Assembly: GCF_001194135.2 (NCBI RefSeq)
Contig: NC_069002.1
Location: 15,170,689 to 15,234,688 of the forward strand
DNA from: Octopus bimaculoides
Lineage: Eukaryota
Direction: 5' to 3'
Length of the DNA stretch: 64,000 bases
Shown here in pieces: positions 995-63,758 of the stretch. Under the pieces are notes generated by a model. The model saw only the letters and a list, made by a program, of their open reading frames with translations. It searched no databases and was not told the origin of the DNA. The position numbers and the translations under genes are program-made. Numbering within the stretch: the stretch's first letter is position 1; every line of letters begins with the position of its first letter.

Positions 995-1384
995 CTTTAC
1001 ATTAGTGACCCAGCTTTTTGTTATGGTATCACCTTTATACACAAGAGAGGCTGAAATATCAAGTATTCTGGTTTGGGTTTTATCTCTTAATGAATCCACG
1101 ACTGCTTTAATTGGTAGAGTTCTTAGCTGGTTCCAATTATCCATAGTGAAGTGTAGAGCACAACACGATGTGTTCTTTTGACAAGTGTTGAATCCGACCA
1201 CTGCTTGCATAATTTGGAGATTTTCACACCTATATTCATTCTTTAATTGGAATCTTGGTACAAGTGTAATGCTACAAAATTCAGGGTCAGCAATTTTGCA
1301 GAAGAAACTTGGTGGGAATGTTAAAACAATTTTGATGTGCTTTTCTTTTTCACCCTCGACAACAGTTAGAGACTTTGTGTCCAC
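995..1384 (-). CDS. exon 35 (R3 p3), phase 0-0; gene continues beyond window start
   Basis: taaaag|GTG...AAG|gtaagt; 390 nt; VDTKSLTVVEG...TFPPSFFC...IKAVVDSLRDKTQ...TNVK. Confidence 0.9.

Positions 1385-63758: not shown

What the first reader, a model, noticed from the sequence alone, without database searches (positions are those of the whole stretch)
995..63758. Giant VWDE-like protein built from at least four tandem copies of the whole ~800-aa core
Seen: a 15-exon block recurs with identical intron phases and several identical exon lengths (115/115/115, 93/93/93, 77/77, 64/64). Complete copies are R1 (61426-30635, 799 codons) and R2 (27579-6987, 812 codons); R0 and R3 are cut by the window edges. 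The copies are strongly diverged in sequence but keep their Cys patterns, so the duplications are old. Established (from memory): vertebrate VWDE has a single VWD core followed by EGF repeats and has been linked to regeneration blastemas. Inference: a lineage-specific multi-VWD secreted or matrix protein, mucin- or FCGBP-like in architecture but derived from VWDE.
Basis: partly seen in the sequence, partly recalled or inferred. Interest (0 to 1): 0.75.

Follow-up and report, generated by a model that had tools for sequence, protein, structure and literature searches.

The report
Tandem-core VWDE-like giant octopus gene
The window holds part of one very large Octopus bimaculoides gene in which the whole ~800-residue core of a VWDE-type secreted protein is repeated head to tail at least four times; this is real, but similar multi-core proteins occur in snails, bivalves and ribbon worms, so it is not special to octopus.

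Summary
On the minus strand, 35 exons with canonical AG/GT sites form a 5,868-nt frame without stops. They comprise two complete 15-exon modules, R1 (799 codons) and R2 (812 codons), plus parts of R0 and R3. Intron phases are identical in R1 and R2, and four exon lengths are identical. All three inter-module introns are phase 1. All five N gaps lie in introns and no exon is missing.

Modules are 31-34 % identical to each other, yet 37 cysteine columns are shared by all three full copies (0.1 expected by chance). Each module aligns end to end with the single core of shark, amphioxus and Hydra VWDE. A structure model puts its centre closest to mucin, VWF and FCGBP D assemblies.

The window is Octopus bimaculoides. 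UniProt A0A0L8G0B6 already joins part of R1, R2 and R3, with transposon-derived errors.

The "lineage-specific" inference fails. Multi-core relatives exist in Bulinus, Bradybaena, Haliotis, Aplysia, Biomphalaria, Pecten, Argonauta and two nemerteans. The junction peptide is conserved with gastropods, and several core duplications predate phylum splits.

No transcript evidence was available and function is inferred. Verdict: a real, undescribed variant of a known family, of moderate interest.

The parts
63543..63758 (-). R0 exon p14 (216 nt, phase 0 to 0)
   Evidence: AG/GTAAGT sites. Paralogous to R1 and R2 p14. 71 % aa identity to related-species contig L002, dN/dS 0.52.
62547..62661 (-). R0 exon p15 (115 nt, phase 0 to 1), last exon of module R0
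   Evidence: Same length as p15 of R1 and R2. 47 % identical to R2 p15.
61427..62546 (-). R0>R1 inter-module intron (1,120 nt, phase 1, no N)
   Evidence: No signal-peptide-like first exon found. Gap-free.
61203..61426 (-). R1 p1 (224 nt, phase 1 to 0): start of the N-terminal Ig-like domain
   Evidence: Weak Ig_3 hit. Paralog of R3 p1.
59283..59375 (-). R1 p2 (93 nt)
   Evidence: 93 nt in R1, R2 and R3.
57361..57735 (-). R1 p3 (375 nt): second beta-rich domain
   Evidence: Paralog of R2 and R3 p3. 77 % aa identity to L001, dN/dS 0.40.
55673..55749 (-). R1 p4 (77 nt): VWD start with the N-D-P-H motif
54147..54210 (-). R1 p5 (64 nt): VWD
   Evidence: Found by a phase-constrained paralog search, score 81 against R2 p5.
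49866..50069 (-). R1 p6 (204 nt): VWD
47808..47919 (-). R1 p7 (112 nt): VWD
43290..43398 (-). R1 p8 (109 nt): VWD end (GLCGTFDG)
41914..42083 (-). R1 p9 (170 nt): Cys-rich linker
40086..40189 (-). R1 p10 (104 nt): linker
   Evidence: Best splice scores in the interval; similar to R2 p10.
38166..38315 (-). R1 p11 (150 nt): start of the helical, C8-like domain
36155..36326 (-). R1 p12 (172 nt): helical domain and start of the EGF
33958..34151 (-). R1 p13 (194 nt): EGF and start of the C-terminal beta-sandwich
32108..32341 (-). R1 p14 (234 nt)
30635..30749 (-). R1 p15 (115 nt, ends in phase 1)
27580..30634 (-). R1>R2 inter-module intron (3,055 nt, phase 1), containing the N gap 29721-29905
   Evidence: Continuity across the gap cannot be verified from the window.
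27332..27579 (-). R2 p1 (248 nt)
   Evidence: Boundaries identical to UniProt A0A0L8G0B6.
25782..25874 (-). R2 p2 (93 nt)
22797..23198 (-). R2 p3 (402 nt)
21791..21867 (-). R2 p4 (77 nt): VWD start with N-D-P-H
20821..20884 (-). R2 p5 (64 nt)
19226..19444 (-). R2 p6 (219 nt)
18013..18115 (-). R2 p7 (103 nt)
17182..17287 (-). R2 p8 (106 nt)
16789..16952 (-). R2 p9 (164 nt)
15041..15147 (-). R2 p10 (107 nt)
13804..13959 (-). R2 p11 (156 nt)
12500..12680 (-). R2 p12 (181 nt)
10599..10789 (-). R2 p13 (191 nt): EGF
8135..8344 (-). R2 p14 (210 nt)
6987..7101 (-). R2 p15 (115 nt)
5394..6986 (-). R2>R3 inter-module intron (1,593 nt, phase 1, no N)
5173..5393 (-). R3 p1 (221 nt)
2712..2804 (-). R3 p2 (93 nt)
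995..1384 (-). R3 p3 (390 nt). The remaining R3 exons lie beyond the window edge.
   Evidence: The rest of R3 is seen in A0A0L8G0B6. No third N-D-P-H exon occurs in the window.

Best explanation
The window covers the middle of one very large Octopus bimaculoides gene on the minus strand. The gene encodes an extracellular, cysteine-rich glycoprotein made of tandem copies of the complete VWDE-type core.

Each core is about 800 residues, encoded by 15 exons. Its predicted layout is:
- an N-terminal Ig-like beta-sandwich
- a second beta domain
- a VWD domain
- a cysteine-rich linker
- a four-helix, C8-like domain
- one tenascin/teneurin-type EGF
- a further beta-sandwich
- a small cysteine-rich tail

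The 15-exon block begins and ends in intron phase 1. Whole-block duplication, and whole-block skipping, therefore keep the reading frame. That property is how the array could grow by unequal crossing-over.

The copies are ancient and are all kept intact. The tandem-core design is shared with other lophotrochozoans.

By analogy with the D assemblies of FCGBP, mucins and VWF, the protein most likely acts as a secreted, disulfide-stabilised beads-on-a-string scaffold or cross-linker in an extracellular matrix or mucus. It lacks mucin-type O-glycan regions.

Shown: the exon structure, frame, phases, domain content, family relationship and distribution across animals. Inferred: a single transcript, secretion and function.
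For: **Gene structure**
- 35 canonical exons form a 5,868-nt frame with no stop.
- The R2, R3 and most R1 exon boundaries are the same as in the independently predicted UniProt model, with 99.9 % identity over 1,049 aa.
- Each p1 has an acceptor site and each p15 has a strong donor site, so both are internal exons.
- All three junction introns are phase 1 and short, 1.1-3.1 kb. None holds an ATG-initiated hydrophobic first-exon candidate.

**Junction conservation**
- The junction peptide, with W-x5-[FY]-P spacing, is conserved in Bulinus and Bradybaena proteins whose cores abut directly.

**Domains**
- Pfam finds VWD (E 1e-13) and one EGF per module.
- The AlphaFold model has mean pLDDT 76.
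- Foldseek's best matches are MUC5AC, MUC2, VWF and FCGBP D assemblies, with TM 0.56-0.58 relative to D3 assemblies.

**Family relationship**
- The module aligns end to end with single-core VWDE.

**Constraint**
- 49 positions are invariant across R1, R2 and 18 homologs.
- 37 cysteine columns are shared by the three modules.
- dN/dS is 0.40 and 0.52 for the two exons testable against a related species.

**Extracellular character**
- There are 30 N-glycosylation sequons in the 1,956-residue chain (11-12 per full module) and no membrane-spanning stretch.
- Full-length relatives in Lineus, Tubulanus, Haliotis, Aplysia and Biomphalaria start with hydrophobic leaders that look like signal peptides by eye; no predictor was run.
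Against: - No cDNA or RNA-seq evidence was available, so splicing of p15 to the next p1 is inferred.
- The only octopus protein model that joins the modules is a 2015 prediction. It starts in a transposon fragment and contains SINE-derived pseudo-exons.
- The Bulinus and Bradybaena proteins are also predictions.
- The gene's N- and C-termini lie outside the window, so secretion, the total number of cores and any terminal EGF array are unknown.
- One junction intron (R1>R2) holds an assembly gap.
- dN/dS of 0.4-0.5 shows only moderate constraint, and rests on two short exons.
- No expression or functional data exist for any protostome member in the literature searched.
Confidence: 0.78

Rival explanations
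1. The modules are separate, tandemly arrayed single-core genes. Each would have its own promoter, signal-peptide exon and terminator, and they only appear joinable in silico.
For: There is no transcript evidence. Read-through past p15 meets a stop within a few codons at R1>R2 and R2>R3, so a short 3' end is conceivable. AATAAA or ATTAAA motifs occur in all three junction introns.
Against: - Every p1 begins at a good acceptor site in phase 1, which is not how first exons begin. Every p15 ends at a consensus donor site.
- No ATG-initiated hydrophobic exon with a phase-1 donor exists in any junction intron.
- The junction introns are shorter than many introns inside the modules.
- Independent predictions in Bulinus and Bradybaena, and the UniProt model, join cores directly with a conserved junction peptide.
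Confidence: 0.07
2. It is one gene, but mature transcripts carry variable subsets of modules. Whole-module skipping or alternative module choice is frame-neutral because every inter-module intron is phase 1. The encoded proteins would then be smaller and more varied than the full concatenate.
For: The phase 1-1 symmetry of the 15-exon block is shown. The modules differ strongly in sequence (31-34 % identity), so different subsets would give functionally distinct isoforms.
Against: There is no evidence of any isoform. All modules have comparably good splice sites. Tandem-core proteins in other species are predicted with consecutive cores.
Confidence: 0.13
3. The repeats are an assembly artefact, such as collapsed or duplicated haplotypes or mis-scaffolding across the N gaps.
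For: There are five N gaps in the window, one of them in a junction intron.
Against: - The copies are only 31-34 % identical at protein level, far too diverged for haplotype duplicates.
- Two junctions are gap-free.
- Related-species contigs reproduce individual exons with their flanking introns.
Confidence: 0.02

Closest known systems
[quoted passage not shown]
   Same: The whole ~800-residue module is collinear with the VWDE core: N-terminal Ig-like region, VWD, helical region, one tenascin-type EGF and the C-terminal beta and cysteine-rich region. Domain E-values against the module profile run from 1e-40 to 1e-100. 49 positions are invariant across the alignment. The database's precomputed Pfam list for the octopus protein includes PF26129 and VWD, as for VWDE proteins.
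   Different: Chordate and cnidarian VWDE proteins have one core followed by an array of EGF or calcium-binding EGF repeats (Pfam lists; core counts). Here the core itself is repeated at least four times with nothing between copies. No EGF array is seen within the window.
Uncharacterised multi-core proteins of other Lophotrochozoa: Bulinus truncatus KAH9523928.1, Bradybaena similaris BsWGS_04858, Haliotis cracherodii XP_071110645.1, Pecten maximus LOC117339037, Argonauta hians GAB1607640/41, Lineus longissimus LOC135489721, Tubulanus polymorphus LOC141899868
   Same: They carry two to four or more complete VWDE-type cores in one predicted protein. In Bulinus and Bradybaena, cores abut directly with the same junction peptide and spacing as in octopus.
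   Different: Most others have spacers of roughly 200-290 residues (PAN domains in Pecten) between cores, for example Pecten, Lineus and Argonauta. None is a detectable one-to-one ortholog of R1-R3, with identities of 30-38 %. All are unnamed predictions, and no paper in the library searched describes them.
FCGBP (IgGFc-binding protein) and the D assemblies of gel-forming mucins and VWF
   Same: These are tandem repeats of a VWD-centred, cysteine-rich unit without mucin domains. FCGBP is the best sequence match in the PDB (E 1.8e-10). Foldseek matches to MUC5AC, MUC2, VWF and FCGBP D assemblies reach E 1e-12 to 1e-8. A D-P-H motif occurs in each VWD; in FCGBP and MUC2 the GDPH motif is an autocatalytic cleavage site (from memory).
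   Different: The repeating unit is about 800 residues with flanking Ig-like domains and an EGF, not VWD-C8-TIL-E of about 380 residues. No TIL domain was found by Pfam. The motif is N-D-P-H rather than G-D-P-H, and there is no CGLC motif. The relationship is by domain, not by orthology.

Membership tests
VWDE family | A VWD domain (PF00094) | tested here: met
   R1 scores E 4.1e-13 (50.4 bits) and R2 scores E 1.8e-13 (51.5 bits). Both exceed the gathering score of 22.9 and cover the full model.
VWDE family | Collinear similarity over the whole core, not only the VWD | tested here: met
   The module profile (805 positions) matches Hydra VWDE at 1-802, amphioxus at 71-802, and sharks, teleosts and marsupials at about 16-461 plus 520-802.
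VWDE family | N-terminal VWDE-like Ig domain (PF25776 Ig_VWDE) | tested here: inconclusive
   There is only a sub-threshold hit at the start of R3 in P0002 (19.6 bits against a cutoff of 28.1). Nothing was listed for R1 or R2. The AlphaFold model does show a beta-sandwich at residues 8-91 with pLDDT 80-90. The homologous position in the Pecten protein passes the cutoff at 33.4 bits.
VWDE family | PF26129, a family listed for nearly all VWDE hits | not testable with these tools
   It is listed among the database's precomputed Pfam domains for the octopus protein P0002. It was never returned by the local Pfam library, so I could not place or name it.
VWDE family | A C-terminal array of EGF or calcium-binding EGF repeats after the core | tested here: not met
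   Each module has a single tenascin/teneurin-type EGF and is followed at once by the next core. The true C-terminus is outside the window, so a terminal array cannot be excluded.
VWDE family | One core per protein (the canonical architecture) | tested here: not met
   At least four cores are present.
FCGBP / gel-forming mucin D-assembly proteins | A repeating VWD-C8-TIL-E unit | tested here: not met
   VWD is present. A helical region follows, and the VWD-centred part of the model matches D assemblies structurally. No C8 or TIL family was detected by Pfam, and the unit is about 800 residues with extra Ig-like and EGF domains.
Gel-forming mucins | Pro/Thr/Ser-rich O-glycosylated regions | tested here: not met
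   S+T+P make up 18.9 % overall. The richest 50-residue window has 18 such residues and is not mucin-like.

The most novel reading that the evidence does not exclude
The tandem VWDE cores act as interchangeable cassettes. Every inter-module intron is phase 1, so any p15 donor can join any downstream p1 acceptor in frame. The octopus could then produce a family of extracellular scaffold proteins with different numbers and identities of cores from one locus. If the invariant D-P-H in each VWD also undergoes FCGBP/MUC2-like autocatalytic cleavage, each core could become a covalent cross-linking unit in skin, sucker or gland secretions, or in a regenerating arm.
Probability: 0.12. Interest if true: 0.6.

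Novelty: new variant of a known kind. Interest (0 to 1): 0.4.

Why it matters

Molluscs and nemerteans carry versions in which the entire core is multiplied, and the core duplications go back before phylum splits. Three things follow.
- It defines the natural structural unit of the protein: about 800 residues encoded by a phase-symmetric exon block.
- It supplies many diverged natural copies, which help map invariant residues and disulfides.
- It flags a widespread, unnamed family of giant lophotrochozoan extracellular proteins that automated annotation currently breaks up or contaminates with transposon exons.

It does not by itself link octopus arm regeneration to this gene.

Tried and rejected
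- A raw translated self-comparison was swamped by SINE-like interspersed repeats and microsatellite translations. It became usable only after repeat-like fragments were filtered out.
- Pfam on single exon ORFs gave nothing useful.
- The first protein search, with one exon, returned only a 149-aa genomic fragment. The third, with the upstream part of the chain, returned only another fragment, so no annotated model for R0 or R1 p1-p5 was found.
- A gene-record look-up for P0002 found nothing, so the flanks of the locus could not be fetched.
- The Logan contigs L001-L003 are genomic, not spliced, so they give no junction evidence. L002's extra ~1 kb upstream of the window holds no recognisable R0 p13.
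- The Argonauta giants were considered as orthologs and rejected: they are 30-36 % identical to every octopus module and their cores are separated by spacers.
- The neighbour-joining trees do not resolve where the octopus modules sit. R1+R2 had 72 % support in the small set and under 50 % in the larger set. I therefore make no claim about when R1, R2 and R3 split.
- tRNA and Rfam scans were negative.
- Literature searches for the accession, and for VWDE in cephalopods or molluscs, found only incidental mentions.

Full report
**1. What the window is**

The sequence is eukaryotic, with 38 % G+C among called bases. It is full of microsatellites and interspersed repeats and has five N runs. A search with the assembled protein chain returned UniProt A0A0L8G0B6 of Octopus bimaculoides (2,568 aa, "VWFD domain-containing protein") at 100 % identity. 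The window is therefore O. bimaculoides genomic DNA.

**2. Checking the observation**

A translated self-comparison of minus-strand stop-free fragments, with repeat-like fragments removed, gave a collinear chain of diverged paralogous pieces. The chain recurs in four places.

Three short exons missed by similarity were recovered by listing AG...GT candidates of the required phase in both copies:
- p5 is 64 nt in both R1 and R2, with paralog score 81.
- p9 ends in phase 1 in both copies.
- p10 is 104 nt in R1 and 107 nt in R2, with the best splice scores in the interval.

The final model has 35 exons, all AG/GT. It gives a 5,868-nt frame with no stop.

Exon lengths of 115 (three copies), 93 (three copies), 77 (two copies) and 64 (two copies) are identical between modules. 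All other R1/R2 differences are multiples of three, so all 15 intron phases are conserved.

Modules share 31-34 % of residues. They share 37 cysteine columns among all three full copies, against 0.1 expected from shuffling.

My R2 and R3 p1-p3 exons, and R1 p8-p15, agree with the independent UniProt model. Identity is 99.9 % over 1,049 aa and 98.4 % over 426 aa.

**3. The assembly gaps**

All five gaps lie in introns of the model:
- 45384-46024 is in R1 intron 7.
- 26137-26250, 24584-24622 and 7620-7713 are in R2 introns 1, 2 and 14.
- 29721-29905 is in the R1>R2 junction intron.

No exon is missing from either complete module. Each module aligns with single-core homologs over the whole 805-position profile.

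The R1>R2 join is the only adjacency that depends on a gap. The R0>R1 and R2>R3 junctions are gap-free and have the same in-phase design.

**4. Anatomy of a module**

Pfam finds one VWD (about residues 242-402 in R1 and 259-420 in R2) and one tenascin/teneurin-type EGF (about 605-633 and 627-654) per module.

An AlphaFold2 model of R2, built with 22 homologs, has mean pLDDT 76 and pTM 0.60. It shows, in order:

| Residues (R2) | Predicted element | Exons |
|---|---|---|
| 8-91 | beta-sandwich | p1-p2 |
| 112-251 | second beta domain | p3 |
| 257-392 | VWD sandwich | p4-p8 |
| 430-530 | poorly ordered cysteine-rich stretch | p9-p10 |
| 539-604 | four-helix domain | p11-p12 |
| 627-655 | EGF | p12-p13 |
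| 681-743 | another beta-sandwich | p13-p14 |
| from 753 | small cysteine-rich beta domain | p14-p15 |

The best Foldseek matches are the D assemblies of MUC5AC, MUC2, MUC5B, VWF and FCGBP. TM is 0.56-0.58 relative to D3 assemblies of about 330 residues. FCGBP is also the best sequence match in the PDB.

The chain has no membrane-spanning stretch, no Pro/Thr/Ser-rich region and no CGLC motif. It has 30 N-glycosylation sequons and an N-D-P-H motif in each VWD.

**5. One gene or several?**

- Each p1 starts at a proper acceptor in phase 1, and each p15 ends at a consensus donor after one extra base. Splicing p15 to the next p1 therefore keeps the frame.
- The junction introns are 1,120, 3,055 and 1,593 nt. 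None contains an ATG-initiated hydrophobic exon with a phase-1 donor.
- The peptide across the junction is conserved with identical spacing in gastropod predictions whose cores abut directly:
  - octopus R1>R2: WTDIRDFPQLTADVKL
  - Bradybaena: WTDRNDFPRLTAKLDL
  - Bulinus: WTNRNDFPKIEAKLEV
- The UniProt model also joins R1, R2 and R3. However, it begins inside an intronic reverse-transcriptase fragment and includes SINE-derived pseudo-exons.

I could obtain no transcript evidence. The only related-species contigs are genomic.

I judge a single multi-core gene to be about 80 % likely. Separate genes are unlikely. Frame-neutral module skipping is possible but untested.

**6. Relationship to VWDE**

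A profile of the three modules aligns end to end with the single core of Hydra, amphioxus, shark, teleost and marsupial VWDE. Those proteins then continue into EGF arrays (Pfam lists), which the octopus modules lack.

The vertebrate blastema role is documented in PMC7390686. That study looked only at deuterostomes. PMC9117669 treats VWDE as a class with a VWD domain and EGF repeats, distinct from planarian equinox.

**7. Is the multi-core form specific to octopus?**

No. An HMMER scan of 1.84 billion representatives gave 1,467 relatives. Of the 181 proteins I could score, 164 have one core and 12 have two or more. The multi-core species are:
- Gastropods: Bulinus truncatus (at least 4 full cores in 3,858 aa), Haliotis cracherodii (3), Bradybaena, Candidula, Gigantopelta, Aplysia and Biomphalaria.
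- Bivalve: Pecten.
- Octopod: Argonauta hians (two models of 3,038 and 3,759 aa).
- Nemerteans: Lineus and Tubulanus.

The Argonauta proteins are paralogs of the window gene. They are 30-36 % identical to every module, and their cores are separated by spacers of about 220 residues.

Bootstrapped neighbour-joining trees of modules give supported pairs that are specific to module position and cross species:

| Grouping | Bootstrap support |
|---|---|
| Lineus m1 with Tubulanus m1 | 82 % |
| Lineus m2 with Tubulanus m2 | 84 % |
| Nemertean m2 with the brachiopod and annelid single cores | 98 % |
| Biomphalaria m2 with a Pecten core | 88 % |
| Bulinus m1 with a Bradybaena core | 100 % |
| The three Haliotis cracherodii cores together | 100 % |

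Core duplication is therefore partly ancient, before the phyla split, and partly recent.

The octopus modules have no supported partner. They are as distant from each other as from cores of other phyla. Their splits are very old or very fast, and I cannot date them. These distance trees rest on near-saturated data and should be repeated with better methods.

**8. Constraint**

- 49 positions are invariant across R1, R2 and 18 homologs.
- Against genomic contigs of a related species (about 83 % nucleotide identity), R1 p3 keeps its exact length and has dN/dS 0.40.
- R0 p14 has one 3-nt indel and dN/dS 0.52.

This indicates moderate purifying selection, based on small samples.

**9. Most likely mechanism**

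The locus grew by duplication of a phase 1-1 symmetric 15-exon block. It encodes a giant secreted, N-glycosylated, disulfide-rich beads-on-a-string protein. Each bead is built around a unit resembling a D assembly.

By analogy with FCGBP and mucin or VWF D assemblies, it probably serves as an extracellular scaffold or cross-linker. Possible self-cleavage at D-P-H is speculation.

Secretion is inferred from relatives whose N-termini look like signal peptides by eye, because the N-terminus of this gene is outside the window.

**10. Verdict**

The gene is already present in databases as an uncharacterised and partly mis-built prediction. Multi-core relatives are widespread but undescribed in the literature I could search. 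This is a new variant of a known kind, of moderate interest.

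Noticed in passing
window 52086-52811 (-), also 52892-53273 (-): An intronic reverse-transcriptase fragment lies in R1 intron 5 (RVT_1, E 2.8e-16). The UniProt model A0A0L8G0B6 starts inside this fragment, so its first ~77 residues are transposon-derived rather than part of the gene.
   Followed up: partly
window ~30054-30144 (-); also 57-248, 20148-20249, 37682-37906, 43875-44057, 58601-58792 and others on both strands: A SINE-like interspersed repeat occurs many times in the introns; one translated frame reads 'LQSDLAEFLQLDALPNANHSESVVGAF'. 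It has been taken up as pseudo-exons in the UniProt model at the R1>R2 junction, inside R1 and at the C-terminus.
   Followed up: partly
window 35139-35603 (+) and 24625-24852 (+): These ORFs look, from memory, like C-terminal parts of Tc1/mariner-type transposases. No Pfam family reached E 0.01, so this is unconfirmed. The second abuts the N gap at 24584-24622.
   Followed up: partly
window 1660-2016 (-) and 6006-6404 (+): Two more intronic ORFs. The first hits DUF7047 (E 3.5e-9). The second (132 aa) has no Pfam hit but looks like a retroelement-associated ORF. Both are probably transposon remnants.
   Followed up: partly
window 7487-7980, 31075-31442, 45251-45383, 49120-49308 and others: Long (CA)n/(TG)n and (TA)n microsatellites are present. 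Several flank the N gaps directly, which suggests the gaps are unresolved simple repeats rather than scaffold joins.
   Followed up: no
L001 (SRR11869391), L002/L003 (SRR11869384, SRR11869390): Short genomic contigs from sequencing runs of an unidentified related species reproduce R1 p3 and R0 p14 with their flanking introns, at about 83 % nucleotide identity. Exon identity is not higher than intron identity. L002 extends ~1 kb upstream of the window but holds no recognisable R0 p13.
   Followed up: partly
P0037 / P0182 (Argonauta hians GAB1607640.1, GAB1607641.1): Two consecutively numbered Argonauta gene models are 90 % identical over 3,038 aa. They are either isoforms, overlapping predictions or a very recent duplicate of a whole multi-core gene. 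Their cores are separated by ~220-residue spacers for which no Pfam family was reported.
   Followed up: no
P0002 residues ~1825-1928 (outside the window, R3 between p4 and p5): The UniProt model carries a ~104-residue insertion between R3 p4 and p5 that has no counterpart in R1, R2 or any homolog. It is probably another mis-predicted exon.
   Followed up: partly
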